Numbered from the stretch's first letter, positions 29,504-59,829 are shown. The stretch is 64,000 nucleotides of DNA from Ostrea edulis (GCF_947568905.1 NC_079164.1:29698001-29762000), one strand, 5' to 3'. Translations and numbers: made by a program. The notes: generated from the sequence alone by a model not told the origin.

Positions 29504-30163
29504 TTACCGCATTAAGCTTCCAACATTCAATCTTACTACATATAAAACTCCTCTCTCTACAATGTTCTCGACACTTCTGCCATTCTCATGGTACTTGGTA
29601 ATGGTAACCTCTTTAACTCGCTTTCGGTAGCCAGCTGTCTGGGTACTTTTATCCACTGTACTTCCGACACCAGCATCAGTCTGTGTCGCAACTGCCACGC
29701 CACCCTGGGCAGGATACACTGCGGTTCTACAGACCACTTTTCTAGGAGCTTGAACAGGACTAGGAGAAGTTCGTTTTCTGTACGTACGTCCAGTCAACAG
29801 GTCAATTGTATCAGCCTTATCTGCTGGGGGTTCTTTTTCCTTGGACGTCTCCTCCAATTGAACCTCAGGATCTTCATCCCAGTCACTCCCACTGTCACTA
29901 TCATCCTGCGGTGAACAACTGGGTCCTGGAATCTCTTTCTCTGTCTCTTTGGACCTATCGATCTCCACATGCTTCAACCTCATGTGTTTTGCTAGATATT
30001 CTTTCTTCTTAAAGGACACATGACATCTTTCGCACACTAACATGCTGCTGGCGCACTTTACTACATGGGCTGTCCAGGCATCCTTCCCTTCCACTTCCAT
30101 AAAGCACACTGGACAAATCTCCTTCAGTTTCTTGGGGGTCACCTTTGTGTTCACCATTGTCAT
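29504..30163 (-). CDS. Gypsy-1 accessory ORF, 219 aa: C2HC plus C2H2 zinc fingers, acidic tract, TQT motifs
   Basis: tttttcag|A ATG at 30163; CPVC-x12-H-x3-C, CERC-x12-H-x4-H; VATQT, DKSTQT; fully open. Confidence 0.85.
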   Translation of the reverse strand: MTMVNTKVTPKKLKEICPVCFMEVEGKDAWTAHVVKCASSMLVCERCHVSFKKKEYLAKHMRLKHVEIDRSKETEKEIPGPSCSPQDDSDSGSDWDEDPEVQLEETSKEKEPPADKADTIDLLTGRTYRKRTSPSPVQAPRKVVCRTAVYPAQGGVAVATQTDAGVGSTVDKSTQTAGYRKRVKEVTITKYHENGRSVENIVERGVLYVVRLNVGSLMR

Positions 30164-30312
30164 TCTGAAAAATATGTAAAACACAACAACCTTATACAAA
30201 TGATTTCAGCCTTCTTGATAAAAACAAACAATAGCAGGACTACTGGTCCTATCATAGCATAGAAAGCTCTGGGATATAGAATTTATACATATATACAACA
30301 GAAATTCAGGTT

Positions 30313-33300
30313 CTAGTCCTGAACATAATCATGTAGCCAAGTAGGAGTACGCCTTTCGCGTTGTGGTCGGTTCTCAGCAACCAACTCGTCTGTAACTTCA
30401 ACATTTTTGTTGGAGGATCTAAAGTCATCATCCTGTTCTTCGATATCTATATCAATATTTGGAGAGTCACTGAACCCTTGCTCGGTACCCTCGCCTCTGA
30501 GAACTTGAGCCTTACAGTCTTTCATCCTGTCGCAATGAACTACTTGTTCCTTTCCGTTGCGTCCACAGTTGACCTTGTATAGGACTTCGGATACTTTTGC
30601 CAGGACCTGGAATGGTCCTCGCCAATACGATGTCAACTTGGGAGAGCAACCGGTTTTCCTTTGGGGGAAATATACATACACCGAGTCCCCAGCAATGAAT
30701 TGCTCATAGGACATCTTCATGTCGTGATAATGCTTTTGCCGAAGAATTGCTCCCTCTGAATGTCGTCTAACCAAGTGGTGGACCCGTTCCATCCGATCGA
30801 GCAGAATCCAGACCCAGTCATGCTTTGGGACTTGTTTCCAGGATGAAGGCATATCATATATAATATCCAACGGGGTGGTAGATTCCCTACCCAACATAAG
30901 CATGTTTGGGGTGAATCCCGTTGATTCATGCTGCGATGCTCTGTATGCCATAATTACAAAGGGTATGCTTTCATCCCAATCCCGATGATTATCATCGACA
31001 TAATTACTTAGCATTGTAGGTAAGGTCTTGTTGAACCGTTCTACCATACCATCAGACTGAGGATGGTATGGTGTGGTTCTTGTTTTTCGGATTTGCAAAT
31101 GTTTGCATACCTCCTGGAATAAAAGACTCTCATACTGGCGGCCTTGGTCGGAATGTATGGAGACAGGGACTCCAAACCTACAGATTACTTCCTCTACAAT
31201 TAGTCTTGCTACAGTTTGAGCCTCCATGTTAGGCATTGGGAAGGCCTCTGTCCATTTGGTGAAGTAATCCGACACTACCAGTATGTAGCGATTCCCTTTA
31301 TCTGTGACTGGGAATTCCCCAAGGATATCTGTCGCTATCCTCTCCATTGGGTAACCAACTTGTAAAGGTTGCATTGGACCTCTCTTTGTCTTAAGTGGAG
31401 CTTTCCTTCGTGCACATTGGTCCCATCCAGCAACATAACTCCTAACATCACTTTGCAGACCCGGCCAGTAATAATTCTGCCGAATCTTGTTCAATGTCTT
31501 GGTCACTCCTAGATGACCAGATGTCTTTGAATCGTGCATCTGCTGCAAGATAAATCTTCGCTGTGAGAGCGGCATAACAATTTGATATGCCGTATTGTTG
31601 CTCCCCTCAACTTCCCACATGCGACACAGCAATTCATCCTTCAGCGCCAATCTACTCCACAGTGACTTGACCATGTAACTTTCAGCAGTAACTTCAGTGT
31701 ACTCTGGACGCTTCCCATCCTCCATCCAATCCTTTACAAGTCTTATATCCCGACTTTCATCCTGCATTTCTACTAGACTGCTTGATTCAGCAGTACCCAC
31801 GTCTTTAACCTCCTGGTTCAATGTTCTTGTATAGTCCTCATGCACATCTGGTTTCTCCCAGTCGTCAAAATATCCACATTGTGTGCAGGGAATTCTACTT
31901 AGCCCATCTGCATTTCCATGCAGTCGCCCAGCTCGATGCTCGATTTCCATATCATATGCCGAAATCACCTCAAGCCATCGAGCTAACTGCCCTTCAGGGT
32001 CCTTAAACTTAAGCAACCACCGAAGGGAACTGTGATCCGTCCTCACAAGAAACTGGCGTCCATACAAGAAATGCCTGAAATGTTTTATAAATGTAACTAC
32101 TGCAAAGAGTTCCTTCCTTGTCACGCAGTATCTTCTCTGAGACTTGCTGAGAACCTTACTGGCATACGCTACTACCCTCTCCTGTCCATTTTGAACCTGT
32201 GAAAGTGTTGCGCCGATCGCATTTTGGCTCGCATCTGTATCAAGGATAAATGGTTTGCTGAAATCGGGATGCGTGAGGATAGGTGCTGATGTTAGTTTTG
32301 CTTTCAACGCATCAAAAGCTATCTGGCATTCATTTGTCCATTTGAAAACAACCGATGCTTCAGTCAATCGATGTAATGGACGAGCTATATCGGCAAAGTT
32401 TGCTATGAATTTCCTATAATAGCTGCAGAGGCCAATGAAGGACCTTACTTGCGTCTTGTTCACTGACTCTGACCACTTTTTAACGGCTTCAACCTTCTCC
32501 ACATCCGTCTCGACCCCCTTTTCAGATATAACATGCCCCAGGTATTTGACGTGTTTTGCAAACAGCGTGCATTTCCTGGCCTTCAGCTTCAAACCAGCTT
32601 CTCTTAACTTTTCGAAGACCAATTCTAGGCTTTGTAACATTTCTTCATAGGTTTTCCCATACACAATAACATCATCTAAATAGATGAGGTATACTTGCCA
32701 CTGTAAACCTGACAACACCGTCTCCATAAGACGTTCGAATGTTGCCGGGGCATTGCAGAGCCCGAATGGCATTACAATGAACTCATACAAACCTTGCCGG
32801 GTCACGAATGCTGTCTTAGGCTTGTCTTTTGGGTCTAGCTCAACCTGCCAGTATCCAGCGTTAAGGTCGAGGGTACTGAACCACTTTGCACCATTCAACT
32901 GATTGAGTGATTCATCGATACGAGGTAGGGGATAGGCGTCTTTGGTAGTGACACTATTTAACAGCCTATAGTCTACACCTTTTGGATCCGTCCTTCTTTT
33001 TTACCAAGACGATTGCTGATGACCAGGCACTCTGAGAAGGTTCAATAATACCTCTTTTCAACATGTCAGACACATGTTCTTCGACTTCTTTTTGCATATG
33101 AAATGGAAGGCGCCTTGGTGCCTGTTTGATAGCTTGTTGAGTCCCGGTATCGATCTTGTGTTGAACTATTGAGGTTCGACCAACATCCTCATCAGTCACA
33201 GAAAACAGATCTGAATACCTGATAAGTAAATCTCTGGCCATGTCTTTTTCGTGACATCCGAGATTCTTAGTGCTACTATCAAACAGCTCCTGTATATGCT

Positions 33301-35095
33301 TTGGCATTTCCTGCGTATTATTTGCAGCTTTCTTCGTACATAACACAGCTACCATCTCACTGATTGGGGACAACTTACCAACCACAGTTCCTGGCTGAAA
33401 AGTCTTGTTAGAAGATGACAGATTCATCAGGCGGAGTGGTACTCTTTCTTGGCGTCGTATCAAATACCTAGCCAACATAGCAGAATCTGATTGTAAGAAC
33501 TTTTCAGATGGCTCCACCAGTCCAATTTTCACAGGGAACCCCCCATCCGGCCCTGCACAGATCTTGCCCTCAGCCATTACTTCAGACCTGGGGGGGGGGG
33601 GTATGACAACCCTGTTGACTAGTGCAATCTTGTACTCATGTGCGGTGCCTTCCAACTGAATAGGGTGTTCTATCCCAGATATGGCAACTTTGTGTGTACG
33701 TATGTTTATAATGGCCTCATGCTTGACGAGGAAATCTAAACCAAGAATTCCGTCCACAAATATATCAGCCACGATCATTTCTTGTTGAAGAGTTTTCCCA
33801 TTCAGCACAAGGCTGATCGATGTTTTACCATATATCCCTACAGAGGACCCATTGGCGGACAGTACATTTCTGTCAACCTATTCAATGAGCACATGTCTTT
33901 TCCGTGTATGTTCCCATAGCATACCTTTGATAGCAAGGAAACAGTGGCACCTGTATCAATGAGTAAGTACGCATCCATCTCATTTATTTTGGCTGTCACA
34001 TAAACTCCTGACTCCTTGATAGAATGGATGGTCCTCGAGTGTTCCTCTCCTATTTTGGGTTCGTTACCTTGAGCCCGATCACTTGGCTTATGTCCAGTTG
34101 TATTCATTTTCTTCTGTTTATAACCTGACTGATGGGTGGGGTTAAATTCGGGACAATCTCTTTTTAAGTGTTTGTCAGATCCGCACCTGTAACACTTTCG
34201 TACACTGCTTGCATAATTATTCCTACTTTCATCTTTGGCCTGCCTTGCATCGCGTCCCTTTGTTTGCATTTGAAACTTCCATTGTTTCATGTCCTTCATT
34301 TCCCTTTGGAGATATCCCATATTTTTCTCCATCGTCTCTATGAATTTATCAATCTTTGAACCGTGATCAGACTCTTGATCTACGCGTCTCACACTTTCAG
34401 TGCGACGGCTCTCGGCTCTGTAAAATGCTTCAAGTTCAACGGCTCTCTATAGCGTCGTTTAGACTGTGAGGTCTGGCCTGTTTTACCTTCAGACGCATCT
34501 CCGCGTTATGCAGTCCATCTAGAAACTGTTCTGTGGCAAGGATCTCACGAACATCGTCCGGAGCCGTAGGATAGGCTAGATTCACAAGCCTCCTTATCTC
34601 TTGGCCCATCTCCGGTAAACTCTCTGAAGGTCTCTGTCTCCTTTCTCTAAGCTGAGTCCTATATAGCTCTGTCTGGTTTAAGGAAGCAAACCTATCCTGC
34701 AAAGCCTTGACCAGTTTTGCGTAGTTTTGTCTCTCATCCCTTGGCTGATTACCCAGCACACCTTGAGCTAGCCCTCTAAGAGATGAAGCTAGATATAACC
34801 CCTTCTCTGTCTCGGTCCATTCGTTTAGCAGGCACACAGACTCAAAATGAGATAGATAGTCGTTCCACATGCCTGAACCGTCATAAGTAGCAGGTTTAAT
34901 AAAGTTCCTTGGCTTTGATCTCGCCTGATTTTGGTTTGCATCTATCCTTGTGCTGTGTGCAGGGTTCTGTCCTCCGTTTACATCCTCGTGATTCAGGCTA
35001 ACATCACCAAGAGCCCTATCCGGTCTACCTGTAAACGGTGTACTCGTCCTTGTTATTTGTCTTGGCCTTGAGCTGCCAGAGATACTTTCCTGCAT
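30313..35095 (-). pseudogene. Gypsy-1 gag-pol, broken by at least three frameshifts (about 34440, 33840, 32970)
   Basis: KPATYDG gag, CYRCGSDKHLKRDC knuckle, LIDTGA protease, YLDD RT, FILDTDAS RNase H, HHCC (one Cys to Trp) and DDE integrase. Confidence 0.93.
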
Positions 35096-35232
35096 ACCTA
35101 AAAGTCGCAAAGATTAATCTATCTCCCTACTGAGATTTTCTATTTCTCGATCTATGTATGATATGTCAGCCCGTAGACCAGACATTGTGATAGAAACAAA
35201 TTTATTATAACCCTATCAAAACGACCTAACCC

Positions 35233-35252
35233 AAATTCCGCAGCTGCCACCA
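35233..35252 (-). other. Gypsy-1 primer binding site, tRNA-Leu-like
   Basis: TGGTGGCAGCTGCGGAATTT 5 nt downstream of the 5' LTR. Confidence 0.7.
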
Positions 35253-35257
35253 ATTTA

Positions 35258-35867
35258 TGTTCCGTGTTTGGGTCCGTAAATTTGGAAAGATCAAGACAAT
35301 GATAGATAAATGATTGTATATAGAGAAAAATGGCAATCAGCAATAATTACAAAAAATGATGATGTAAATAAGAACGAGTCAATATATACATATAAGTCTT
35401 AGGATTATCTATCCCTAATATAAGAGCAAACAAATCTAATTAGGCATATGGTTTGTGTCTGGGCAGGTATGTATCCTCGGGACAGGTATGTATCCTATAC
35501 AAGTATGGGTCTCGGATGTATCCCCAAATCTGTCCTATACCCAGACAGAACTTAAGTACAATTATATCGAAATATAACAAACAGTTTTAATTCACTGTAT
35601 AACACCCTAAAACCAGTATACTAACCACCGTATACTAAAAATAACCAGGGTTGAATTTATTCTCGCCTTACCGCTTCTGCTGCGATCTTACTCCTTTGAG
35701 CTCCGACAATGAACTGGCGAAATATCGCTCATCACCGTCTTATATACTGATGTGCACTCGAACTACCCTCGGACGCTTTCGTAATGCACAGCAATAAAGC
35801 CCGGTTTACGTAATAGCTAGATACATCCCTAGCCCGACTTTTCCGAGCCCGACCGTTAATCATCACA
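35258..35867 (-). repeat. Gypsy-1 5' LTR
   Basis: TATATAAG at 35746-35739, G|GTAAGG at 35671, AATAAA at 35661-35656. Confidence 0.95.
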
Positions 35868-37369: not shown

Positions 37370-37651
37370 GATTGATTGTATATTGTTTAACGTTCCTCTT
37401 GAGAATATTTCACTCATAAATATGGAGACGTCACCAATGCCGGTGAAGAGTTGCAGATTTTAGGCCTATGCATGGCGCTTATAATTACATATTAAATGGC
37501 CATTGAGCTGGGAGGGATCTTAATCGTGCCACACCTGCTGTGACACGGGGCCTCGGTTTTTGCGGTCTCATCCAAAGGACCGTCCCATTTAGTCGCCTCT
37601 TACGACAAGCAAGGGGTACCGAGGACCTATTCTAAAGCGGATCTCCACGGG
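37370..37651 (-). mobile_element. SINE (Deu/Nin-like) inside Tc1
   Basis: Same family as 27830-28092. Confidence 0.8.
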
Positions 37652-37910
37652 ATCGAAAATCACTGCTAGAAAACATTTGGACGGAGATCGAAAGAGTTGA
37701 GCACAGCGGTGAAAAAATGATTATAAAATCTGCGAATCATACACCAAATAAAGCAGAATTGGCGAGGATGTTTGGTATACCTAGGTCGACAATTGAGAGT
37801 ATTTTGGATAAATTCCACAAGCAGGGTACCGTTGAAAACACCCCGAGATCGGGCCGTCGACTTTCGTAAGCAGAAGTTAAGTCGTCTCGCTGAGGCCAAC
37901 AGAAGAAACT

Positions 37911-40639: not shown

Positions 40640-40985
40640 TTGGTAATATTTTCTTTCGAGGTAAATGATCTGGAAAAACACAATCTATAATTAAATTATA
40701 TATCCATTTTATCTCAGTTATTTACATGTATATCAAAATGATCTGAATAAAACAACGATCATTAGGCTGAATGCTGTCTGACGCGTTTAACATACTGATT
40801 TTGACTACGGATCAATCTGCTTACCTGATCTCGAGATAGGACTCACGGTGTAACTGGTCAAGAAGGGATGCTTACTCCTCCTAGACACTTGACCCCGGCT
40901 TTGGTGTGTCCAGGGTTCCGTGCTTGCTCTACTCTTAATTTTGTATTCATTATGGGATTTATCAAATTAATCACTATTCGTTATA
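40640..40985 (+). mobile_element. Non-LTR retrotransposon 3' fragment; shorter copies at 43335-43483 (-), 60436-60562 (-), 48893-48924 (+), 40048-40078 (-)
   Basis: Shared 3' sequence ending GATCACTGTTCGTTATCTTCACC, variably 5'-truncated. Confidence 0.6.
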
Positions 40986-41213: not shown

Positions 41214-41246
<33 letters not shown>

Positions 41247-41282
41247 TGTCGGTGTCGTCGTTGTAAACTTTTCACATTTTCA

Positions 41283-41326
<44 letters not shown>

Positions 41327-42329: not shown

Positions 42330-43037
42330 TCCTCCCACTGGCTGACGTTCCTCTTCTTGGGCTTCACTATTACTTCGACCCGTTGTTTAGCTAGTTATCA
42401 TTGGACAAGAAAACCACATACAACTCTAGCTTTCACTCTTCCTCTGGAACGGGGAGGGTCTCCTTGGGAGGGGGACACTCCGCTGCAGAGCGTCTGAACC
42501 TCCAGACTTTGTCTACCGGTGGGGTTCCCATTCGGTCATCAAAAGGTTGCCGTGAGATTGCTGGTCTGCTGGGAGCCCAATTCCTCCTGCTGAGTTCATG
42601 TTGAGAACTGATCTAACCAGCTTCCTATGAAGATTTTTTCCATTTTGATTTTCTGTGCCGCCGCGGTACTCGAAAAAAAAAAACTCAGGGTCAACGAACT
42701 TTGTGTTTCGTTTTTTTTTTTTTGTTGGTCATCTGACATTTTGCCATTATGTTCTCCCTTCCTCTAGCATCCGTCTCGTGCTTGTTCCTTATATGGGTAC
42801 GCATGTCAGCCTTTCTACCACAACTTGCTTAGCAACCCATCACCGCACACTGGTAGGATGTATTCACCTGGCGATGACGCTCGTCCCAGTGACGGAAGTA
42901 GCGAACCAAGATTCCGAGCAACCAAATATCGGACATTCCATGTTGTCAGAATAGAAAAATTCCGTCTTATTTTCTATCTCCAGAAACATGCCATCATCGT
43001 CATCGACGGAAGTGTCAATTCTGCATTCATCATTATT
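42330..43037 (-). pseudogene. Gypsy-3 accessory zinc-finger ORF remnant
   Basis: T-rich tgtag| acceptor at 43038-43039; MECPIFGC..(frameshift)RHWDERH and YQCAVMGC*ASCGRKADMRTHIRNKH (42941-42778). Confidence 0.7.
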
Positions 43038-45521
43038 CTACACTAATAAATAAATAACATTATTTTATGGATTTATTTCAATTTCTTAAATTATCTCCCC
43101 ACTACCTTTAAAAACTAATTCAAATACATATTCGGGTCATCTAGCAATAATTTAATATTAGTTATCGTAATTCCACAAACCATAACGATCTGGGTTTTTG
43201 ATTTTGTCTTCCAGATTTTGTTATTTCAGTAATTCAGAGATTACTGGCACTCTCATCTTGCTATATTTCGTTTTCTTCTACATCGTCGACGGTTAGAAAT
43301 TTACGATCAGATTTATCTAACTTCAAGTGATCAATGAAAGGTGAAGATAATGAACAGTGATCAATCTCCTAGAAGCAATACAAAATAGATAGTTGGGCAA
43401 ACACAGACCCCTGGACACACCAGAGGTGAGGTCAGGTGCCTAGGAAGAGTAATCATCCCCTGTCGACCGGTCACACCCGCCGTGATGAATGATCTATTTT
43501 TGATTTATTTCCGTCTATTTCGCGGATTTCATATGTGACGTCGGAGAAGCGCTGGACCACTTCGTAAGGTTCTGTCCATCCTAGGGACAATTTTTGTCTC
43601 GATCTTGGAATGCTCCATTTCTGAACTCCTACATTTTGATCGTGATATTTATTCTGTTTCTCAAAACCGAGATCAATGCACATTGAGATGCCGTATTCAT
43701 AGTATGTCACATCCATTCTATGTGTTCAATTGGACACTGTTTATCCATTTCATTTGATGACCTTCCTACAGGTAAATCAATTGAAACTGAAACTTCTCTG
43801 CCTAGCATCAATAAGTTCGGTGCGCATTTAGTAATTTCGGAAGTCTGTATGGTGTAGTTCTGCTCTTGATTTATCCCGAGAAGAGAACACATTTCTGAGA
43901 AAACTCAGCTTCAAACTCCCTCCAGGGATCAGTATGTGTCCTGTATGACACTCCATATCTGCAAATGTACTCAGTGACCACAATGTCCGCAACAATTTGA
44001 GCTTTCATCCATTTGGAGAAATAGTCTCCGACTACGAGAATACATTTATTTCCTTTATCTGTATATGGCAGTGGACCCAATATATCAATTGCTATGCATT
44101 CCATCGGGTAAGTGAACGTGTTGCGTTTCACTGGTTATTTCCCGGAACCAATCTTTTTCTGTTCACAAAGATTGCAGGTATCACATCATTAGTCATACCA
44201 GCTAGGCCAGTAGAAACGAGTTTGAATTTGTTTTCAATGCTTTTGTTAATCTAAGAGACAGGTATGCAGCTGTTTCATTATCTCAGAACGAACTGATGAT
44301 GGTGCAACAACCTGATTCATTACTATTCATTTTTCTTCATCATTCCAAGTTCTATAAAGCAATCCATTTTCCTTCTTTAGCTTATCCCATTGCTGTTGCA
44401 ATTGGGATACACTATTGGTGGCGATGTTTATTCTTGGTTTTTCTGTTTTGTCTATCATATATTTCATAACGCATTGAATGTTTTCGCCCCTTTCTTGCAG
44501 CTCTTACTATTCCATAGCTCAGTTCAGTTTGATTCTTCAGTGACAATAGCTGCTAGTAGATTTTGTTCAGTAGGTCCGGAAGAAACAGCTGTAGTTGTTA
44601 CGGCATTATTACCATCTTGACCATTCGTTATCAGCATACATTCAGGACAATCTGTTCGTTTGCATTTCCTAAATGGAGCTCGTGAAAATGCATTTTGGTG
44701 TGCTGTTTCTTTCCTATGATCGATCTTGAAATCATATGTGTCCAGACAACTCTCCCTGGTTCCTTAAAAATTTAAGCCAGGTTAAGGAGTAAGAAAGGTC
44801 GTCCAAATAAACGATGCCTGAATTGTTTGACAAAAGGGACTGCTGCTAAGAGTTTTTGATATGTTGTGCAATATCTACGTTGTGATTTAGACAGAGGTTT
44901 ACTCCCATAAGCTATAACCCCCTCTTTTCCATTCCGTAACTTGAAATTACGCCTCCTATTCCGTAACCATTGACACGCGTATCCAGGATGAAACGTTCAA
45001 TTTGGGTGGGGTAAGCTAAAATTGGTGCAGTTGCCAATTTATCCTTCAAGTTATTGAATGCATAATTGCAATTACCAGTTAATATGAACTTTACATTCTT
45101 TTGTGTCAGTCTAGTCAAAACATAGGGAATTGATGACAAGTTTACCTAGGAAACTTCTTAAGCTGGTTAGATCGGTAGATGTTCGCCAGTTTTTAACAGA
45201 AGCGATCTTTTTAGGGTCACAAGCAATCTCTTTCTCTGAAACAACGAATCCCAAATAACAAACTTTATTAATGAAGAGACAGTATTTCTTCGGCTTTAGT
45301 TTGAGATTTGCGGACTTGAATCTACTGAATACAAGTTTCCAGTTTTCAAGCGTTTCATGAAAAGTTTCCCCAAATACAACAACGTCATCTAGATAGACCA
45401 GGCATCCTTCCCTCTGTAGTCCATGTATATGTTGGTAAACCGTTTTTCGAGTACCAAGATATTTGGTGCTGAGCGAAGCGAGGGACCAAATCAAGTGGCG
45501 AGAGAAAAGTTAGATCACACT

Positions 45522-46426
45522 TAGTACATGTTTCACACGAGAAATGAAAACTCTATTTAATTTATTATAACCCTTTCATATTTGTTATTCTTTATTGAAG
45601 ATCATCAGCATTTATGTTGATTGGCGCAATTTTGTATTGGCTGGGGTTGATAATTTGTGCCCTCAAGGGGAGTTTACCTGTATTCAACAACCAGGTGAGG
45701 GTACGCAGTGAGTAGTTTTCAAGTATTATTTTTTTTGGTACACACTCAATAGGGTCTGCCATGTTTTTTCAAATGGATTTAAGTTAAGAACTTATCAAAA
45801 ACTATTCTTTTGGACATGTTCGGACATACTTTCATGCGTTTCCTATACATCATTTCTGAAAATGATCTTGAAAACAGACTATCTGGGTGACCAACAAAAA
45901 CGGATCACATATGCTGATAGAGTGATATAAAACTGTCCCTGTGTCTTTTAAATTTGTTTCAAATGATAGATTGCTGGATGTATCGCGTTGTGACCGACGA
46001 CCGAACACAAGATGGTGAATACACATCCTATACTATTTTCATGAAGCGTTAGTAATGGGGCATAACAGATACCTCAGTGATAGAGAGAGAAGGAAAGAGA
46101 GAGAGAGGAAGAGAGAGATGGAGAGAATAAATATATCTCAAATAGAGCATGTTTGATCTTATGTTTCTGTTGGTCGCCCAAGGCACCCAATTTTTTTTTT
46201 TTTTTTTATATTCAATGTTCCATACCAATTCTTCCCGTGGGGATCCGGGTTAGAATAAGTGCTCAGTACTCCTTGCTTGTCGTAAGAGACGACTAAATGG
46301 GGCGGTCCTTCGGATGAGACCGAAAAAACCGAGGTCCCGCGTCACAGCAGGTGTGGCACTATAAAGATCCCTCCCTGCTCAAAGGCCGTAAGCACCGAGC
46401 ATAGGCCTAAATTTTGCAGCCCTTCA

Positions 46427-46466
<40 letters not shown>

Positions 46467-46696
46467 GGAGAGACGTTAAACAATATACAATCAATCCATA
46501 CCAATTCTTGTAATTGACACACCGTATTTAGAAAGTGCGATGCCCTTATTTGATTGTTACCAATCATTGATAATTATTGGTTTAATAATTATAAAGACAA
46601 TGACACGGTTACCCAACCATGAAACTTGGACTTGGAGTATACCAAGTTATTTTGTACACGCAAAAATCTTTTGTTCAAGGTGTGAAACATGTACTA
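45522..46696. mobile_element. TAG-terminal (Academ-like) non-autonomous element inserted in Gypsy-3 RT
   Basis: TIR TAGTACATGTTTCACAC / GTGTGAAACATGTACTA. Confidence 0.6.
46234..46496 (+). mobile_element. SINE (Deu/Nin-like), full unit
   Basis: 13-bp TSD CATACCAATTCTT. Confidence 0.85.
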
Positions 46697-48939
46697 ATTA
46701 ATGTTAGTTCCATCAAACGTTCAAACTATTTGACAACCCAAAGGGCATGTCCTCCATGGCGACTTGCCAAAATCCACTCGTCAAATCTAAAGTAAAAAAA
46801 AAAAACTTAGTGCCTGAGACCGAGCTTATTGATTCGTAGATTTTTGGCAGCGGGTAAGTATCTTTTATGACTACTGAATTTAACTTACTAAAATCAACAC
46901 AAAAAGCATCTTCGCTAGCCAAGGGCCGTCATGGGGAGCGGAGTGGACCGAAAACCCTTGGCTATCGAAGATGCACAAAAAGATGTTGTTTCATTCTTGT
47001 TCTTTGCTAGCACTATCGTCAAAGCACAAGGACTGTTTCTACTCTCAGTGATACCATTATCTAGCATATTGTTGATCTCTTGTTCAGCGACTTCTTTTCG
47101 ATGTATTGGTAAATCTTCGAGGTTGTAATTTGATTGGCTTGACATTCCCAACATCAATTCGATGCTTCAAAATATCTGTTTGTTCTAGTGTATTGTTCGG
47201 ACAAACAAAAATATCCGCGTATTATAATATAGTCTCCTTGAGTTCATTTTTCTCATCGTTATTGAGTTTCTTTGACGAATTTTCAAGTAGGCGCTAAGTG
47301 TTCGGGTAAATTGGAAGTTCGTTTTACAGATAAGTGTTCCTCCTCTGATACGCAATTTACAAAGCATTCAGCCTTGTAAGTGGTCGCAACTTTGACTCTG
47401 CAGGCAACAGAATAGGGTGATTATTGGATTCAGTATGGAAATAATAACTCTGTTAGATGGACAAACTACTGACTTATGTATCAGAACAGGATGTTCCCTT
47501 TGAAAATCCTTACAAGGCTTTACATTGTATAATGCCTTCTGAACTCCAGGGAAAATGTCCTACTATTTTGCATATACATGTAGTAAGAATTTCGGTGTTG
47601 GAGGTTCTGTTATTGAATTGCTGAGACACTTGTTAATTGAAAATTTCTTTTTCTGAAGCTGCATTTCAAACAGCGATGATTTCATTTTTCCCGCACCAGT
47701 GTTTATCAATATCCTTTGTTGAGCAAGAAAATCAAGTCCAAGTATACCACCTGGAAATCCTCCTAATTCTGCCACTATCACCGAGTGTGCGAATTCTTGA
47801 TCTTTCAATGACACATGTCTTTCTGTAGCTGGTTTCCCCTTCAGCTGTCATCACTGTTGTATCAATTGAGGTCAACTGAGCTGAACTTAAAGCAACATAT
47901 CTAGTTGAATCTGTGCATGTTTGTTGGATATGAGAGTAACCACCGGTCCAGTATCCACTAACAATGTCACTTGCTTCCCATCAACTTGATTTTACTGCTG
48001 CTAGTTTGATTTTACTTGGTGACCTCAATGAAATATCTTTATTATTTACTTTCTTTTGTGCTGAACAGTTGGCCTCTTGCTCAGTCCGTTCCTGTTAAAA
48101 GGCTGATCAACTTCCTTATTAGACGCTTGGTTATCCGATATTTGTTCCTCCTTAGACCTTTCTCTCTTGAGACAGTTTGTACTGATGTGACCTTCTTGTC
48201 CACGTGAATAACAGGGTTTTTTGTCTTTTTCTTTTCAGTGTTAAATGCTTCCCTATTCGAAGTCAGTTTTTAAGTTCTACTGATATGACCTTCTTGTCCA
48301 CGTGAATAACAGGGTTTTTTGTCTTTTTCTTTTCGGTGTTAGATGCTTCCCTATTCAAAGTCAGTTTTTAAATACACCTCTGTTAATTCGATTTATCGTT
48401 CCGTTGTTTATGACGTAACATATCGTCGCTTTGTTACGAAATGTAAAACTTGAAGATTGAAAATGAAGGCGTTTACTAAACATTGCCGTGTTTCTTGACG
48501 CAAGCGTCAAACTCTTCAAATTAGACGTAACAAAATGATGTAAAGCAAACCTTCTGAAAGCTTTATGATTTTTATATCATTTAATCTTACACATTAAACG
48601 TTTTTTCATTGGTTGACAAATGAGTGGTATATCGTATCCAACGAAAAAAAAAATCCGAAACTGTTTTCTATTGAAATTTTGGGGATTTATCTGGATGCTC
48701 CATATTTATAGATCTGTTTATTGATTGAGAATCCTGAAAAGGAAAACTTAACAGTTCTATTGATCTAAATAAATTTATTCAACAACAAAAAACCAAACAA
48801 ACAAATATCAAATATAAATAATAAACAATTGATTATGCAAAATGAAATAAACATAGTTATTTGAAGACAAAAAGGAGAAAATAACACACAACAGATTGAT
48901 CACTGTTCGTTATCTTCACCTTGCATCTGCTTCTGCAAT

Positions 48940-49474: not shown

Positions 49475-50015
49475 ATAAAGGATACTCTCTCCTCTTTCCT
49501 TTTCTCATCTCTCTACTTTACTATTCTCTGTCTTTTACTTTCTTTTTTCCCTACCTCTCCTCTTTTTATCCCCTCTACTCTCTCTGATTCTCTCCCCTCT
49601 ACTCTTTTCTTCTCACCTCTCTTCTCTACCTTCTCGTCTCCTCTCTCCTCCTCTTCTCTCTCCTCATCTCCATAGTCTGCTATTGCTCTTCTCTTCTTCT
49701 CTTTTCTCTCCTCTACTCTCCCCATTTCTCTCTCCTCTATACTCTTTCCTCTTTCCTTGTCTCTCCTTTACTCTCTACTCTCTCTTCCTCTCTGTACCCT
49801 TCTCTCTCATCTTCTTTCTCCATTACTCTCTTCTCCTTTTCCCTTTCTCTCTCTGCTTCTCTACTCTTTCTTCTACTCTCTCCTCTTCTCTTTCCCCTTC
49901 TCTTCTATTTCCTCTACTCTCTTCTCCTCTACTCTCTCCTCCTCTATTCTCTCCTCTAACCTATCATTTTCTCTCTCTACTCTTTCCTCTTCTCTTTCAT
50001 CCTCCCCCTCCCGCC
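49475..50015. repeat. About 540-bp CT-rich polypyrimidine low-complexity tract
   Basis: Almost exclusively C/T on the plus strand. Confidence 0.95.
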
Positions 50016-52373: not shown

Positions 52374-52501
52374 NNNNNNNNNNNNNNNNNNNNNNNNNNN
52401 NNNNNNNNNNNNNNNNNNNNNNNNNNNNNNNNNNNNNNNNNNNNNNNNNNNNNNNNNNNNNNNNNNNNNNNNNNNNNNNNNNNNNNNNNNNNNNNNNNNN
52501 N
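52374..52501. other. Assembly gap (128 N)
   Basis: Run of N. Confidence 1.
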
Positions 52502-54614: not shown

Positions 54615-54653
<39 letters not shown>

Positions 54654-55580
54654 AAATTCTAGATTGATAATGTTAAACCTGTAGGAGTAAAAGAGAAATA
54701 ATGAACAGCAGACGACAGACAAGAACAGAGCGCTAAACATTGTCAGCGCATTAGCGATGGGTCCATACAAACTATCTAAATTCAAGTAATGCATGTTTCA
54801 CATTAACTTAATCTGATTCTTCATCACAGTAACATAGATGTGAATTTTCCAGGAATTCTCCCCTTCAGTTGTTACGTACCTTTCAGTATTGTGAACTTGA
54901 TGCGGAAGAAGGGGACACGGAAAATGGATATCTTATTGAAATATATCACGACATCAATCGTTCCTCCTCTGGCGAAACATCTCCCATTTTATGAGGCGAT
55001 AATGATTGAGTGGAATATTATCACTTCGTTACAATATACGATAATTTTAGGACTGTTGAAAGCGAATTGCTCAGTATGCAATTATTAGCAGATATTATGA
55101 CAGAGATAAACAACTTGACATCTAAAGAAAAGAAATCCTACTAAATAAGCAAAAACTACACAGAAATGAAAATATGCACGTACATGTTCGTATCATTTAC
55201 GCAATCAAGCGTCATTTTCTATAACATATATTGTGCTAATAAAACAGTGCAATGTGAGAATAAATTGAATTACATCTGGTGCATGAAAATTGGTACCGTA
55301 TAAGTTTTGCATGCAATATGAAAACAGTCTACAGATAAATTGAATAATGTGCATGCTGATAACACGATCTAACCGTTACACTGGAGAAGGATCTGACAGT
55401 TTGAGGTCATGTTATTTCACCTTTCACCCTTAACCAATCAGATGACGGCTTTCGCTAACATGAAAATAATCGGCGAAGATGGCGGAGGCCATGAGCGATG
55501 CTAAAATGCCACAGAAAAAATATAATGGATGTATAGTATCTAAGATCCTTTAACGCTGATATTTGGAATTCGTTTAAACT

Positions 55581-55840
55581 GGGATCCGGGTTTGAATAGA
55601 TCCTCAGTAACCCTTGCTTGTCGTAAGAGGCAACTAAATGGGGCGGTCCTTCGGATGAGACCGCAAAAACCGAGGTCCCGTGCCACAGCAGGTGTGGCAC
55701 GATAAAGATCCCTCCCTGTTCAATGGCCATAAGCGCCGAGCATAGGCCTAAATTTTGCAGTCCTTCTCCGGCATTGGTGACATCTCCATATGAGTGAAAT
55801 ATTCTCGAGAGAGACGTTAAACAATATTCAATCAATCAAT
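55581..55840 (+). mobile_element. SINE (Deu/Nin-like)
   Basis: Flank duplication cgt(t/g)taaact; (CAAT)n tail. Confidence 0.8.
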
Positions 55841-58675
55841 CGTGTAAACTTTTCATGGATCGACGCCCGAATTCACTTCAGTAAAGCGATTCCTGATTGG
55901 TCCTTGATTCTTTGTCAAGCTATTGTTATTGGTCGACTATTTATTGAATTATTCATGAGACTGTGGTCAATAACATGACCTCAAATGCAATGCGGTCAGA
56001 TCCTTCTCCATTGTAAAGGTTAGAGAAGAATGAGATTGGCACAGTGTGTAGGTAAATTAAACAGCGTGCATTCTAATAGTAATGTGCAGATAAATTGAAT
56101 ATAGTGCATTCTGATAATACAGCATAGATTCCGCCCATCACAGTTACGACATACGTGTCGCAAAAACGCAGATTCGCACGATAAAGTAAACAATGGCGAC
56201 TACTGCAAATATTCTCGAGATTTTTCCAGTCGATATTTCATTAGATTACGTTAAGAATATCTTCCCCGTTGCTACGCGCCTGATAAATATATAGCAGGGT
56301 CTAACAGAGCAGAATGAAAATACATTTATATTTATAAATCGTTTCGATATTTTTAAATTTACAAAAAATGCCCTCGTGAAACAAAATTTCAAAGCGACAA
56401 TTTTAGAGAAAAACTCGAAGAACATGTTCATGCTAAATTTATTTTGTTTCACGGCGGCAGTTTTTCTGAAATTCGGGGATACCCCTCCATTTTAACGCTA
56501 AAATCATATAAATCGCTTATTGCTTGGTTTAAACTCGAAATACTTTGGCCAATTTTGTCAATACACGTCTTTTAAACTTATTTTTAAAAAAAATATTGAA
56601 TCAAGATATACAAGTTCTAATTGGTTTTATCATACATTTGAATAACTTAATTTTTTCAATCTTCAATGCAACACCTTGTAACACCAATGTAAAGCGTCTT
56701 ATTGTTTATGAATTAGATATTGTGATAGTCAAATTAGAATACTTATTTTTATCCATATCTTCCAACGAACTATTCCTAGCGGCGAAATGTTACGAACTAA
56801 TGTAGTTCGGATTAAAGTAAACGAAGGGAAATATTTTAAATGCAAATCAGATAGTTTGTAAGGATAAAGTATGATGGTTTGTAGTTGGATATGAAGGTTC
56901 GGCAATAGAAAACACACAATTCTTCCTTATATAATGATAATGAGATAATCCCCAGTAGCAAAAAGACAAACATAGTCAGTATACTTGTTCTGATAAAATC
57001 CAGCCGAACTGAACTAAGCCGGCGACGCGCTAAGAATCAAGTGACCCGGCTACAGTACAGTAATGAAAATGTTGACCTTGTATTGTATAAACATTATTCG
57101 GCATAGAAATGACCAACATATTTACAAATCAGGTTTATTTCACCCGTGTAAAATTTAAAAAGATTATATCTTAGAATAAGCAACTCTCGATACCACTGTT
57201 TCCAAGGACGCCAGCTGAAGCCGCCTTCGCCCGTCAAAATTTTCCTGCTCAATCGGCTTACCTGGCGGAATGTGTGCGCAATTCCGGCTCACAATCAAGT
57301 GTGCCGCCGGTCATCGCCGGGTAACCCGAGTACGTCGGATCGTTAGAATCAAGTATGCTAAAGGTGAAATTATTTTGTGTGTGTATGTGTACACAGCGTT
57401 TGCTGCGACGCAGTTGATTCCTTTCCACACGCATTGTGACGTCATCAGTCTGATAAAATGAGATAACACTAAAAATCAAATGCATCTACCAACGAGGAAA
57501 AATGATGCATATACGAAGGCTGTTCGATATGTAATGTGTATTGTACCACAGCGCGATAACGTTTTGCACGATTTCGTGGATGATACTGTAACATGGTTGT
57601 CAGGGTAAACAAATCTCAGACTTTGGTAGCGAGTAGCATACGATTCTGGTATTGAATCGAGTTATAAAACTCTGGTAGCGAGTGAATTTCAAGTAAATAA
57701 GACAAGGCGGTATCAGTTTTGATCAAATAATATTACGATTTCAGTAGCATAGAAATGATATTTACAATGAAAACAATGTGTTTTTTTAAGACAAGATGGG
57801 GAATTCTGTAGTCCAAAACGGAAATGGTTAAAACGAAAGTGAAAATGAAACTAAAGATGATTTATAAACAAGTCGAGATGGATTGGCACATCTCCCTGGG
57901 ATTGGCAGTAATTTAAATGGGGGATAGCTTACCGACAGCTAAAACACGTCCGTCTCGGATCTGTCCAGGATGAGATCTTTAACTTAAACGATGGGAGTTG
58001 GAGCGACTCCCATAACGACATAAGTAGTCGCACGTGTGACAACAGTAACGAAGCATCTTCGCCCAAACAATGGCGTCTTCGTAGATGGTCACGACCATGT
58101 AAACATTGGACTACAGTAAAGGCTAAAGAATTCCATCTCAGCTTATTACAATATATAGTAAATATATACATAAATATATACAAATCAACAAAGCCATTCC
58201 TGAAATGTAAAACAGGACAATATGAATTAATGAAGCTCTAGAAGACGTCTTCCCTTCTATATGGCTCACATTAAATGTATGTACAAATTGAATGACCACA
58301 TATGTGTATATACAAATATGGAAAGATGAAACTAAATGAACATGACTATTATGAATGAATAATAAATAGATTAAATGGATCTCAAATTATCCACATGCAA
58401 TTACCTAGTGATTCAAGTATTAAACACCACACAACTACAGTCATGATATATGATACATATATAAAGTCCAACCCCCACTCACACTATTTGCCTTTACTTA
58501 CCCAAATCCGTTACAATTCCCGCCAACTTAATAAAATTTCGTCCCGAAATGTAATGTTAAAATGAATTTCAAAATGTCTGGGTATCCTTCTCTCTTGTCT
58601 GTAATGCACGGGGATCCCTGGTCCAAGTCTCGGAAAGTAAGTACGTTCTTCCATCAGGAAAGTAAACTGATTCAT

Positions 58676-59512
58676 CTATCTGGACCTGCTAGTATCCGGA
58701 GGGAATGATCCTACGTTTGTAGTTCTGAGTGTGTTGTTTGGCTGCTGTACGCTCGGCCCGTAGAAGTGTGCCTTCATGAGCAAACAGGGAGCGTTGGCAA
58801 AGAGAAACCGGGGGTCGGCCGCGAAACAACTAGGATCCCATGGATTTGTGTCCATAGCAGTGTTCGTGGTAGATACCTCCATGGTTTCAGTATGGGCGTC
58901 AACCATGGTGACTGGTTGAGGGATCCGGTCATTTGTCTGGACTCCAGAATCCACCATGGTAACTGGTGGCATACAGGATGACTCCTCCCATGGTTCCGTC
59001 TGGATGTTGTTAGCTTCCATGGGAGTTGGCTGGTCCTGTACGTCTGGCACCATGGCTTCTTCTGAGTCCAGGAATGAAAGAGACGGATAATCTGGCTCCA
59101 TCTACCCAGTCGCTGGCATATGTAGGTCGTTCCACAGGGCCTCAAATTCTGGATCGTACTGCATACCTCCTTCTGTAGATGAAATCACCGAAGAGGAACA
59201 TCAGGAATCCTGAGTCGTTGCCATTGGCTTTGATGGTGGTGGTCGGATGTTCACAGACTTGACCCGTGGTTGCCGGGTGGAGCGTCTTCTATGCATCTCC
59301 TCGTGCTTCCGAAAGGCGTATGCTCTCGTCTTCGGACACTCATAGCCACATCCTGGTACTTTGCATATTAGTTATTCTCCATGGCTGGTTCTTATATGCC
59401 GGAGGAGTTAAGCTTTCTCGGGAAACCTTCTCCCACATTCATGACATTGGAATTGGTATTCCGGGGGCAAGGTACAAGCATAAGTGAAGTCTTTGTATTG
59501 GAATCTTGACAT
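58676..59512 (-). pseudogene. Gypsy-2 accessory ORF (279 codons, one frame, 4 point-mutation stops): two C2H2 fingers plus VQT motif
   Basis: ttctcttttcgtctttccag|TC ATG at 59512; FQCHEC-x12-H-x4-H; LICKVPGC-x14-H-x3-H; VDSGVQT. Confidence 0.8.
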
Positions 59513-59829
59513 GACTGGAAAGACGAAAAGAGAACATATCATAGTAAATCATCTTCATCTATATAAAATCTACATTTTCCCTGGCAATGGGAAAATGAAA
59601 TGTCTACTAGATCAAAGGGAACATTTATCATTCCTGAATCAATAGTTTCTATAAAAAATGGACTTCACAATAACAAAATAGGTCTAAATAAGTCTATCCA
59701 GGTCCCTCCCATATTTATCAAATTTAATTTTAAAAAATATAGATCCTGGTCATGGATCTACTTCTGCTGTGAACGAGTCTGGGCTGGGACAGTGGGCACA
59801 AACCACCTTCTAACATTCCCCACGTAAGG

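What the first reader, a model, noticed from the sequence alone, without database searches (positions are those of the whole stretch)
29504..59516. Three different Gypsy elements each carry a splice-acceptor-led tandem C2H2 zinc-finger gene in the env position
Seen: downstream of integrase and on the same strand as pol, Gypsy-1 (30163-29504), Gypsy-2 (59512-58676) and Gypsy-3 (43037 to about 42330) each have a T/pyrimidine-rich tract plus AG acceptor followed by two adjacent zinc fingers and a low-complexity tail. The three proteins show no obvious alignment outside the finger pattern, and Gypsy-1 and -2 differ in gag-pol expression mode, so this is not one family copied three times. Established: a third ORF at this position, expressed from a spliced subgenomic RNA, is the env arrangement of errantiviruses and retroviruses; these ORFs have no signal peptide or TM segment. 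Inference: a clade of oyster Gypsy elements encodes its own nuclear zinc-finger accessory protein (trans-activator, silencing suppressor or targeting factor), like complex-retrovirus accessory genes. I am not aware of a description of this, but cannot check the literature.
Basis: partly seen in the sequence, partly recalled or inferred. Interest (0 to 1): 0.92.

Follow-up and report, generated by a model that had tools for sequence, protein, structure and literature searches.

The report
Zinc-finger gene inside oyster Gypsy retrotransposons
One family of oyster Gypsy retrotransposons carries, where retroviruses carry env, a small two-zinc-finger gene that is as strongly conserved as the element's own polymerase. 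A second Gypsy lineage in the window probably has a similar gene, and the third cannot be judged.

Summary
An open 219-codon ORF (30163-29504, minus strand) lies between the integrase stop and the polypurine tract and 3' LTR of a complete element (28657-35867). It encodes two tandem zinc fingers. It is not a captured host exon or a single copy. Full-length relatives (25-97% identity) occur in Saccostrea, Ostrea and Magallana, and in every untruncated locus examined they sit just after integrase on the same strand. These loci include one copy with LTRs 99% alike and one with an unbroken 1629-residue gag-pol frame. dN/dS is about 0.10, the same as RT-IN. The tail is not low-complexity filler: it holds conserved blocks, and the extreme N-terminus is invariant. 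Gypsy-2 and Gypsy-3 are dead copies, and their finger regions are broken. A relative of Gypsy-2 with 51% integrase identity also starts a finger ORF right after integrase, so that lineage is probably real. Gypsy-3 cannot be judged. Splicing is only inferred, from conserved pyrimidine-tract/AG acceptors and a donor-like motif in the LTR; no spliced contig was seen. I found no published description. The nearest known case is CERV of C. elegans Cer1. The assembly gap (52374-52501) lies outside all three elements.

The parts
28657..35867 (-). Gypsy-1, a complete LTR retrotransposon of 7.2 kb, flanked by the 4-bp target-site duplication CTTC (35871-35868 and 28656-28653)
   Evidence: LTR pair found by self-BLAST, 605 bp, 97.9% identical. 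TG..CA ends and flanks read directly. Domain order is gag, CCHC knuckle, PR, RT, RNase H, IN.
35263..35867 (-). Gypsy-1 5' LTR. It holds a TATA box (35746-35740), a donor-like GGTAAGG (35672-35666) about 74 nt downstream of it, and an AATAAA (35661-35656).
   Evidence: A donor-like GTRAG motif lies at a similar distance after the TATA box in the LTRs of L008 and L015.
30313..35176 (-). Gypsy-1 gag-pol, broken. Against the uninterrupted 1629-residue frame of relative L022 it shows 3 frame changes and 2 in-frame stops.
30165..30184 (-). Acceptor-like pyrimidine tract plus CAG, ending 1 nt before the ORF3 ATG
   Evidence: 11 of the 15 preceding bases are pyrimidines.
29504..30163 (-). Gypsy-1 ORF3, 219 codons, no stop. 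It holds fingers at 30115-30053 and 30034-29969, an acidic stretch, a basic and Ser/Pro stretch, and a C-terminal hairpin block. The last ~15 residues depart from all relatives: there are 3 gap openings against L013 over the 717-nt stretch compared.
29262..29279 (-). Gypsy-1 polypurine tract, 3 nt upstream of the 3' LTR
28657..29258 (-). Gypsy-1 3' LTR
59758..63839 (-). Gypsy-2 gag-pol remnant, with its 5' part near or beyond the window end. It is broken: at least 7 frame changes and 7 stops against L022, and it holds a nested ~125-bp repeat.
59515..59534 (-). Acceptor-like pyrimidine tract plus CAG, ending 2 nt before the Gypsy-2 ORF3 ATG
   Evidence: 14 of 15 bases are pyrimidines.
58676..59512 (-). 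Gypsy-2 ORF3 remnant of 279 codons, broken by 4 internal stops with no frameshift needed. It has one strict C2H2 pattern, one non-canonical finger, and an acidic, Ser/Thr/Pro-rich tail.
43471..48240 (-). Gypsy-3 gag-pol remnant. It is broken: at least 6 frame changes and 23 stops against L022, and it holds a nested ~260-bp interspersed repeat. No LTR pair was found.
42330..43037 (-). Gypsy-3 post-integrase interval with finger remnants. It is broken: at least 2 frame changes and 1 stop in the finger part, and 9 stops in the nominal frame. A T-rich tract plus TAG lies 9 nt before the ATG at 43033.
52374..52501 (.). Assembly gap, outside all three elements. Not filled.

Best explanation
The Gypsy-1 clade of oyster Ty3/Gypsy retrotransposons encodes a third gene, ORF3, between integrase and the 3' LTR. 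Its product is a soluble protein of about 205-225 residues. It has an invariant N-terminal motif, two classical beta-beta-alpha zinc fingers, a disordered acidic stretch, a basic Ser/Pro stretch that looks like a nuclear localisation signal, and a small C-terminal beta-hairpin.

Shown: the gene belongs to the element, travels with it across oyster genera, and is under purifying selection as strong as that on RT-IN. It therefore serves the element.

Inferred: it is translated from a subgenomic mRNA. A short leader exon would end at a donor in the LTR's R region and be spliced to the acceptor just before the ORF3 ATG, which is the env mode of expression.

Most likely function (inferred from architecture only): a nuclear nucleic-acid-binding regulator of the element's own expression. 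Fingers, an acidic region and a basic stretch are the layout of a transcriptional activator acting on the LTR. This is analogous to complex-retrovirus trans-activators and, in gene position and mode of expression, to CERV of Cer1.

Gypsy-2 represents a second, distant lineage (about 39% gag-pol identity) with an independent or unrecognisably diverged two-finger ORF3. The window's Gypsy-2 and Gypsy-3 copies are dead.
For: Position and element membership:
- ORF3 lies inside LTRs and target-site duplication in the window.
- It lies inside LTRs 99.2% alike in L015.
- It lies 34-165 nt after the IN stop, on the same strand, in L002, L003-L014, L015, L016 and L022-L027.
- L022 carries an uninterrupted 1629-residue gag-pol frame plus an open ORF3.

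Distribution:
- 18 single-sequence hits and 28 profile hits. All are unnamed or 'uncharacterized protein', from Saccostrea cucullata, S. echinata, Ostrea edulis and Magallana gigas.
- One exact protein was seen on 23 contigs.

Selection:
- ORF3 dN/dS is 0.10 (window vs L003: dN 0.115, dS 1.13) and 0.10 (L003 vs L013). RT-IN gives 0.11-0.12 for the same pairs.
- Zinc ligands, the N-terminal T, K and T, and several tail positions are invariant across 16 proteins down to 25-31% identity. The N-terminal codons differ at synonymous sites between lineages.

Fold:
- Pfam zf-C2H2 E = 9e-5.
- The family profile hits tandem C2H2 pairs in the PDB (INSM1, ZNF524, TZAP, ZBTB7A, CTCF) at E = 1e-9 to 1e-8 over both fingers.
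- The AlphaFold model has two beta-beta-alpha units at pLDDT 80-89. Foldseek's best matches are two-finger DNA-binding domains.
- There is no hydrophobic segment.

Splicing signals:
- A YAG preceded by at least 10 of 15 pyrimidines lies 0-14 nt before the ORF3 ATG at all ten sites scored (taking ATG 43033 for Gypsy-3); L022, read by eye, also has a pyrimidine-rich tract plus TAG 1 nt before its ATG. The same holds for 9.1% of all ATGs in the window.
- A donor-like GTRAG lies about 70 nt after the TATA box in the LTRs of G1, L008 and L015, although these LTRs are diverged.

Gypsy-2 lineage: L020 (51% IN identity) opens an ORF 94 nt after the IN stop. It has a similar N-terminus, one canonical finger and the start of a second, and it remains open to the contig end.
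Against: - No transcript evidence. All 14 Logan contigs of the P0003 and P0001 subfamilies (L003-L014) are collinear with the unspliced element, and I could not tell which runs are RNA.
- The donor-like motif sits inside the LTR, so it is present at both ends. In G1 it lies only a few bases upstream of an AATAAA, which fits awkwardly with use as a donor.
- Two fingers alone give little sequence specificity, and C2H2 fingers can also bind RNA or protein. The activator reading is architecture only.
- In the window copy, Pfam scores finger 2 just below the gathering threshold, and finger 1 is C2HC rather than C2H2.
- The window's own ORF3 has an altered C-terminal end, and its gag-pol is broken, so this particular copy is not functional.
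- Gypsy-2: there is no stop depletion in its frame (5, 6 and 10 stops in the three frames). The only tail relative (P0029/L017) is itself broken and is similar at the DNA level (68-76%).
- L018 shows only finger-like remnants that fail the strict pattern.
- Gypsy-3 has no support beyond the motif.
Confidence: 0.6

Rival explanations
1. Only Gypsy-1 has a real gene. The finger-like stretches after the Gypsy-2 and Gypsy-3 integrases are decayed non-coding or chance sequence, or fragments of something else that landed there. On this view there is one ZF-ORF3 family, not a recurrent feature of several Gypsy lineages.
For: - Neither the Gypsy-2 nor the Gypsy-3 frame is depleted of stops.
- Their pieces do not reach Pfam significance.
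- The Gypsy-2 tail has only one broken relative among 1.8 billion representatives.
- Nothing was found in the JGI metagenomes.
- There is no LTR pair for either element in the window, so membership of the ORF3 region in the element is inferred from position only.
- A nested repeat separates the Gypsy-3 IN remnant from its finger region.
Against: - All four strict finger hits in 128 kb of six-frame sequence fall in the three post-IN intervals, on the pol strand.
- L020, with 51% IN identity to Gypsy-2, has an open finger ORF at the same place, with a matching N-terminal layout and an acceptor-like site.
- Gypsy-2 has a PPT-like run and a TG start right after the ORF3 stop.
Confidence: 0.3
2. 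ORF3 is expressed from its own internal promoter in the IN-ORF3 spacer or the 3' part of pol, or by some non-splicing route, rather than from a spliced LTR transcript. The pyrimidine tract before the ATG would then be incidental or part of a promoter or initiator region.
For: - No spliced contig was seen.
- The 5'-truncated O. edulis copy (L001: about the last 10 IN residues, ORF3 and the 3' LTR) keeps an open ORF3 and is annotated as a gene, although it has no 5' LTR.
- Precedents exist: the maize Grande accessory gene is described as transcribed from its own promoter (title of reference 16 in PMC8220671).
Against: - The YAG plus pyrimidine tract is kept within 0-14 nt of the ATG in lineages whose spacers are otherwise unalignable.
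- A donor-like motif recurs in the LTRs.
- ORF3s of LTR retrotransposons are typically expressed from spliced messages (PMC5408684; Cer1 CERV in PMC10309623).
Confidence: 0.2
3. ORF3 is not a transcription factor. It is an RNA-handling factor that works like Cer1 CERV or a retroviral Rev-type protein, binding the element's unspliced RNA and promoting its export or packaging. Alternatively, it is an integration-targeting tether.
For: - CERV is a nuclear protein encoded by a spliced mRNA from the env position of a Gypsy/Ty3 element and is needed for export of genomic RNA (PMC10309623).
- An element that splices must also get its unspliced RNA out of the nucleus.
- C2H2 fingers can bind RNA.
- The basic stretch could be either an NLS or an RNA-binding patch.
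Against: - No sequence relation to CERV or to any nematode protein came back from any search.
- The best PDB and fold matches are DNA-bound tandem fingers.
- The acidic stretch fits an activation domain better than an export signal.
- Only two insertion sites were seen, which is too few to judge targeting.
Confidence: 0.2

Closest known systems
CERV of Cer1 (C. elegans Gypsy/Ty3 element; PMC10309623)
   Same: [quoted passage not shown] A consensus acceptor lies just before the coding exon. The protein is nuclear, has an NLS-like basic motif and a possible zinc-binding region, is lineage-restricted and diverges fast.
   Different: CERV has 517 residues, comes from a five-exon mRNA, and shares exons and peptides with gag. 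Its cysteine-rich region is a possible C4 finger. Here the protein has about 210 residues, a single coding exon and two classical C2H2-type fingers. No sequence similarity was detected. Its function and splicing are untested.
env of errantiviruses and retroviruses (third ORF from a spliced subgenomic RNA)
   Same: The gene position, the strand and the acceptor-before-ORF arrangement are the same.
   Different: There is no signal peptide, TM segment or fusion-protein family match. This is not an envelope protein.
Trans-activators of complex retroviruses (for example foamy-virus Tas/Bel1 and deltaretrovirus Tax). This comparison is from general knowledge, not tested here.
   Same: A small nuclear regulatory protein is encoded 3' of pol and made from spliced mRNA. 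A nucleic-acid-binding part plus an acidic part is the suggested layout.
   Different: No such viral protein came back from any search here. Those proteins do not use C2H2 fingers. This is analogy only.
Non-env ORF3s of bdelloid rotifer LTR retrotransposons (PMC5408684) and additional ORFs of plant LTR retrotransposons (PMC7264820)
   Same: They show that LTR retrotransposons capture and keep diverse third ORFs, which are usually separate spliced units.
   Different: The rotifer ORF3 types are GDSL esterase, DEDDy exonuclease, coiled-coil, TM and env-like. That paper mentions no zinc-finger type (0 occurrences of 'zinc' or 'C2H2').
Two-finger C2H2 DNA-binding domains (Tramtrack 2drp, ZBTB7A, CTCF, INSM1, ZNF524)
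   Same: The tandem beta-beta-alpha fingers have canonical ligand spacing. These are the best sequence and fold matches.
   Different: Finger 1 ends in Cys (C2HC). The similarity is confined to about 55 residues. The rest of the protein matches nothing.

Membership tests
Ty3/Gypsy LTR retrotransposon (Metaviridae) | LTR pair with TG..CA ends, target-site duplication, PBS and PPT | tested here: met
   Gypsy-1: 605-bp LTRs 97.9% alike, TSD CTTC, PPT 29279-29262, and a PBS-like TGG 5 nt after the 5' LTR. This was not shown for Gypsy-2 or Gypsy-3, which have no LTR pair in the window.
Ty3/Gypsy LTR retrotransposon (Metaviridae) | Domain order gag (CCHC) - PR - RT - RNase H - IN, with IN after RT | tested here: met
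   Pfam hits for Retrotrans_gag, zf-CCHC, an aspartic protease, RVT_1, RT_RNaseH, Integrase_H2C2, rve and Integrase_p58_C, in that order. The Gypsy-2 and Gypsy-3 remnants are collinear with it.
Errantivirus-type (env-carrying) Gypsy | The third ORF encodes a membrane fusion glycoprotein with a signal peptide and a TM anchor | tested here: not met
   The maximum Kyte-Doolittle mean over 19 residues is 0.36-0.97. No envelope family hit is significant.
Classical C2H2 zinc-finger proteins | C-x2-4-C-x12-H-x3-5-H ligand spacing and a beta-beta-alpha fold | tested here: met
   Gypsy-1 finger 2 matches Pfam zf-C2H2 at E = 9e-5, which is 23.2 bits against a cutoff of 25.2. Relative P0023 scores 30.3 bits, above the cutoff. 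PDB profile hits are at E = 1e-9. The model has two beta-beta-alpha units at pLDDT 80-89. Finger 1 is the C2HC variant.
Classical C2H2 zinc-finger proteins (Gypsy-2 and Gypsy-3 remnants) | The same ligand spacing, in an open frame | tested here: inconclusive
   Each has one strict pattern, plus a second that is non-canonical or split. The pieces are below Pfam significance.
Cer1 CERV family | Detectable sequence homology to CERV | tested here: not met
   No nematode protein or protein named CERV was among the hits. The likeness is positional and functional only.
Spliced subgenomic (env-type) expression | A donor in the leader or LTR and an acceptor before ORF3 in the sequence | tested here: inconclusive
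   Acceptor-like sites are present at all ten sites scored, against a background of 9.1%. A donor-like GTRAG follows the TATA box in 3 LTRs. These are motifs only.
Spliced subgenomic (env-type) expression | Exon-junction reads or cDNAs | not testable with these tools
   No read-level RNA data are available. All contigs compared base by base are unspliced.
Histone H3 N-terminal tail mimic | The N-terminus aligns with the histone H3 N-terminus from residue 1 | tested here: inconclusive
   A profile of the first 20 residues (A4) was searched against all PDB chains. 'Histone H3' (7uqj_G) is one of only two hits at E <= 10. Profile positions 1-11 align to chain positions 1-11, but at 12.5 bits and E = 1, which is not significant. 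The single-sequence search did not return it.

The most novel reading that the evidence does not exclude
The invariant extreme N-terminus of the Gypsy-1-clade ORF3 protein imitates the histone H3 tail. Fused to a two-finger DNA anchor and carried by a retrotransposon, it would decoy or recruit host readers and writers of H3 lysine marks at or away from the element. That would make it a transposon-encoded histone mimic that counters chromatin silencing. A recurrent two-finger ORF3 in at least two distant Gypsy lineages would then mark a general, undescribed accessory-gene strategy of bivalve retrotransposons.
Probability: 0.1. Interest if true: 0.85.

Novelty: new variant of a known kind. Interest (0 to 1): 0.62.

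Why it matters
Accessory genes are what separate 'complex' retroviruses from simple ones. In animal LTR retrotransposons they are rare, and only one (CERV of Cer1) has a demonstrated role.

Here a small zinc-finger gene is kept under polymerase-grade purifying selection in a retrotransposon clade that spans at least three oyster genera. A possible second lineage has a similar gene. This gives a tractable, sequence-defined case of a retrotransposon that carries its own nucleic-acid-binding regulator.

There is also a practical point for annotation. Several NCBI 'uncharacterized protein LOC...' gene models in Saccostrea and Ostrea are this transposon ORF, not host genes.

Tried and rejected
Ideas tested and rejected:
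- Host-exon capture or a single-copy accident (Gypsy-1). Relatives in three genera are always attached to the same Gypsy family. The one apparently solo copy (L001, O. edulis) is a 5'-truncated element: DNA homology runs from the last ~10 IN codons through ORF3 into the 3' LTR.
- Homology among the three ORF3s. Pairwise BLASTP of the open pieces gave nothing below E = 0.09. Profile-profile comparison of the Gypsy-1 family with the L020 ORF3 start aligns only one finger (probability 75%).

Searches that found little or nothing:
- Spliced contigs: none among L003-L014.
- Gypsy-2 tail against 1.84 billion representatives: one 80-residue fragment (P0029) and one spurious repeat protein.
- JGI metagenome scans with the Gypsy-2 tail and with the Gypsy-3 IN piece: nothing.
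- L019 and L021 (Gypsy-2-like IN fragments): the contigs end before any ORF3.
- L018: only finger-like remnants.
- Foldseek: no match at E <= 0.001. Only finger domains came back.
- Literature: no paper in the library combines Crassostrea, Gypsy and ORF3. The mollusc LTR survey (PMC6238403), the metazoan env survey (PMC13524379) and the rotifer ORF3 paper do not mention zinc-finger ORF3s.

Not tested: 'different gag-pol expression modes' could not be tested, because the frames are broken.

Slips, declared as required:
1. Before I wrote the histone H3 tail from memory in my reasoning.
3. The script outputs label open pieces by their bounds or show translations with stops, which implicitly shows where frames are interrupted. 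None of this is carried into the report.

All related loci were oyster, environmental or unidentified-organism contigs reached by protein look-up.

Full report
**Assembly gap.** The only run of N is 52374-52501. All Gypsy protein matches in the window lie in three blocks on the minus strand: 35176-30316, 48240-43471 and 63839-59806. The gap is therefore more than 4 kb from any element or ORF3, and nothing below depends on continuity across it. I did not fill it.

**Anatomy of Gypsy-1.**
- Self-BLAST finds a 605-bp direct repeat pair, 28657-29258 and 35263-35867, 97.9% identical.
- The ends read TG..CA. The flanks carry the 4-bp duplication CTTC. A polypurine tract (29279-29262) lies 3 nt upstream of the 3' LTR, and a TGG-led primer-binding-like site follows the 5' LTR.
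- Pfam gives Retrotrans_gag, a CCHC knuckle, an aspartic protease, RVT_1, RNase H, Integrase_H2C2, rve and the p58 C-terminal domain, in that order.
- Against an uninterrupted 1629-residue gag-pol frame in a relative (L022), the window copy shows 3 frame changes and 2 in-frame stops. It is a fairly recent but dead copy.

**The Gypsy-1 ORF3.**
- Between the IN stop (30313) and the polypurine tract lies an open frame of 219 codons, 30163-29504.
- It has two finger patterns: 30115-30053 ending in Cys, and 30034-29969 ending in His.
- Pfam scores the second at E = 9e-5, just under the gathering score.
- A profile of the family hits tandem C2H2 pairs of solved structures (INSM1, ZNF524, TZAP, ZBTB7A, CTCF) at E about 1e-9 over both fingers.
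- An AlphaFold model of a relative (alignment A3) shows two beta-beta-alpha units at pLDDT 80-89, a disordered middle and a C-terminal beta-hairpin at pLDDT 62-67.
- Foldseek's best matches are two-finger DNA-binding domains, none of them significant.
- There is no hydrophobic segment.

**ORF3 is a gene of the element, not a capture.**
- A protein search found 18 relatives, and a profile search found 28. They are unnamed or 'uncharacterized protein', from Saccostrea cucullata, S. echinata, Ostrea edulis and Magallana gigas.
- In every untruncated locus I could read, the ORF lies 34-165 nt after the integrase stop on the same strand. These are S. echinata L002 (pol 81-85% identical, ORF3 62%), Logan contigs L003-L014, L016, L022-L027, and S. 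echinata L015.
- In L015, pol is 50-59% identical and ORF3 only 25%. The ORF lies inside LTRs that are 99.2% alike.
- L022 has an unbroken 1629-residue gag-pol frame followed by an open ORF3.
- The one copy without pol (L001, O. edulis, annotated LOC125683886) is a 5'-truncated element. DNA homology to Gypsy-1 runs from the last ~10 IN codons through ORF3 into the 3' LTR.

**Selection.**
- For window vs L003, ORF3 has dN 0.115 and dS 1.13, a ratio of 0.10. For L003 vs L013 the ratio is also 0.10.
- RT-IN in the same pairs gives 0.11 and 0.12.
- Across 16 proteins, down to 27-31% identity, the invariant columns are the zinc ligands, M1, T4, K5 and T7 at the N-terminus, and several tail positions. 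The tail is therefore not filler.
- The N-terminal codons differ at synonymous sites between lineages, so the constraint acts on the protein.
- The last ~15 residues of the window copy depart from all relatives. There are 3 gap openings against L013 over the 717-nt stretch compared.

**Expression signals (inferred only).**
- A YAG preceded by at least 10 of 15 pyrimidines lies 0-14 nt before the ORF3 ATG in window G1, G2 and G3 (ATG 43033) and in L001, L002, L003, L013, L015, L016 and L020; L022 shows a similar pyrimidine-rich tract plus TAG 1 nt before its ATG. The same holds for only 9.1% of all ATGs in the window. The surrounding spacers are otherwise unalignable between distant lineages.
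- In the LTRs of G1, L008 and L015, a GTRAG donor-like motif lies about 70 nt after the TATA box.
- Together these fit a short leader exon spliced to ORF3.
- Against this: no spliced contig exists among L003-L014, the donor-like motif is inside the LTR and so present at both ends, and in G1 it lies next to an AATAAA.

**Gypsy-2.**
- Pol is badly decayed: at least 7 frame changes and 7 stops.
- The frame 59512-58676 has 4 internal stops and needs no frameshift. It contains one strict finger pattern and a second with non-canonical spacing.
- Stops are not depleted in this frame: 5, 6 and 10 in the three frames.
- The tail has a single relative among 1.84 billion representatives. It is an 80-residue fragment on a 658-bp contig that is 68-76% identical at the DNA level. 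Protein identity is 54% in the ORF3 frame and 40% in another frame.
- The best outside support comes from an integrase-based search. L020 (51% IN identity) opens an ORF 94 nt after its IN stop. It has an acceptor-like site, a similar N-terminal layout, one canonical finger and the start of a second, and it remains open to the contig end.
- L018 (47% IN identity) shows only broken finger-like remnants and an acidic, Ser-rich ORF.
- I rate a genuine ZF-ORF3 in this lineage as probable, not shown.

**Gypsy-3.**
- Pol has at least 6 frame changes and 23 stops. No LTR pair was found.
- A nested 120-bp repeat lies between the IN remnant and the finger region.
- The fingers can be read only across at least 2 frame changes and a stop, and the frame has no stop depletion.
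It cannot be judged.

**Chance.** The strict finger pattern hits 4 places in all six frames of the window. All 4 are in these three intervals, on the pol strand. Shuffles give a mean of 1.0 and no adjacent pairs. The three ORF3s share nothing detectable beyond the fingers.

**What it most likely does.**
- Shown: a soluble, element-encoded two-finger protein under strong purifying selection.
- Inferred: it is nuclear (a basic stretch followed by Ser/Pro), binds nucleic acid, and has an acidic stretch. This is the layout of an activator acting on the element's own LTR.
- Alternatives are an RNA-export or packaging role like CERV, or integration targeting.

**A lead on the N-terminus.** A profile of the first 20 residues, searched against all PDB chains, returns only two hits at E <= 10. 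One is histone H3, aligned N-terminus to N-terminus over 11 positions, but at E = 1. The single-sequence search did not return it. This is a lead, not a result.

**Comparison with what is known.**
- The nearest case is CERV of Cer1, a spliced nuclear protein from the env position that is needed for genomic-RNA export (PMC10309623). No homology to it was detected.
- Rotifer and plant LTR elements show that third ORFs of many kinds exist (PMC5408684, PMC7264820).
- No paper in the searchable library describes a zinc-finger ORF3 in bivalve Gypsy elements. Repbase and subscription journals could not be checked.
- Verdict: a new variant of a known kind, namely accessory ORF3s of LTR retrotransposons.

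1. I wrote the histone H3 tail from memory in my reasoning.
3. Script outputs label open pieces by their bounds or show translations with stops.

Noticed in passing
window 22655-22880, 27828-28093, 37370-37652, 46233-46498, 55580-55845: A ~260-bp interspersed repeat (82-93% identity) occurs in both orientations. One copy sits inside the Gypsy-3 pol remnant, and two bracket Gypsy-1 at about 0.6 and 1.5 kb. It looks like a SINE or MITE family.
   Followed up: partly
window 43344-43463, 60437-60562, 40847-40964 (inverted): A ~120-bp repeat (78-89% identity) is nested in the Gypsy-2 integrase region and in the spacer between the Gypsy-3 integrase remnant and its finger region.
   Followed up: no
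window 8515-9412, 13274-14150 (inverted), 41234-41982: Three copies of a ~0.9-kb repeat are built around a 151-166-bp tandem unit.
   Followed up: no
window 1660-3189 (+): A long open frame (508 residues) has a PP2C protein phosphatase domain at E = 1e-37. It is probably a large host exon.
   Followed up: no
window 50039-51235 (-): A 398-residue ATG ORF has an N-terminal hydrophobic stretch and several N-x-S/T sites but no Pfam family. It could be a single-exon type-II membrane protein gene of the host.
   Followed up: no
window 49482-49998: A CT-rich degenerate tandem array with an 86-98-bp period gives the strongest GC skew in the window (-0.35).
   Followed up: no
window 30163-29504 versus L003:2647-3264; pol 32775-30316 versus L003:4-2472: For the same pair of copies, the synonymous divergence of ORF3 (dS 1.13) is more than twice that of RT-IN (dS 0.46). 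This suggests recombination or exchange of the ORF3 module between subfamilies.
   Followed up: partly
L001:9788-11353 (Ostrea edulis OX387706.1), L002, L015 (Saccostrea echinata): The NCBI gene models LOC125683886, LOC133178302, LOC133195163 and LOC134237990 ('uncharacterized protein') are this retrotransposon ORF3, not host genes. The O. edulis one is a 5'-truncated copy next to a Tmp39 gene.
   Followed up: yes
A3/A4 alignments; window 30157-30128: The extreme N-terminus of the Gypsy-1-clade ORF3 is invariant at three positions across proteins only 25-30% identical. It weakly matches the histone H3 N-terminus in a PDB profile search (E = 1).
   Followed up: partly
L019:509-721 (-): A Myb_DNA-bind_5 ORF lies on the opposite strand, about 300 nt upstream of a Gypsy-2-like integrase fragment in a Logan contig.
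   Followed up: no
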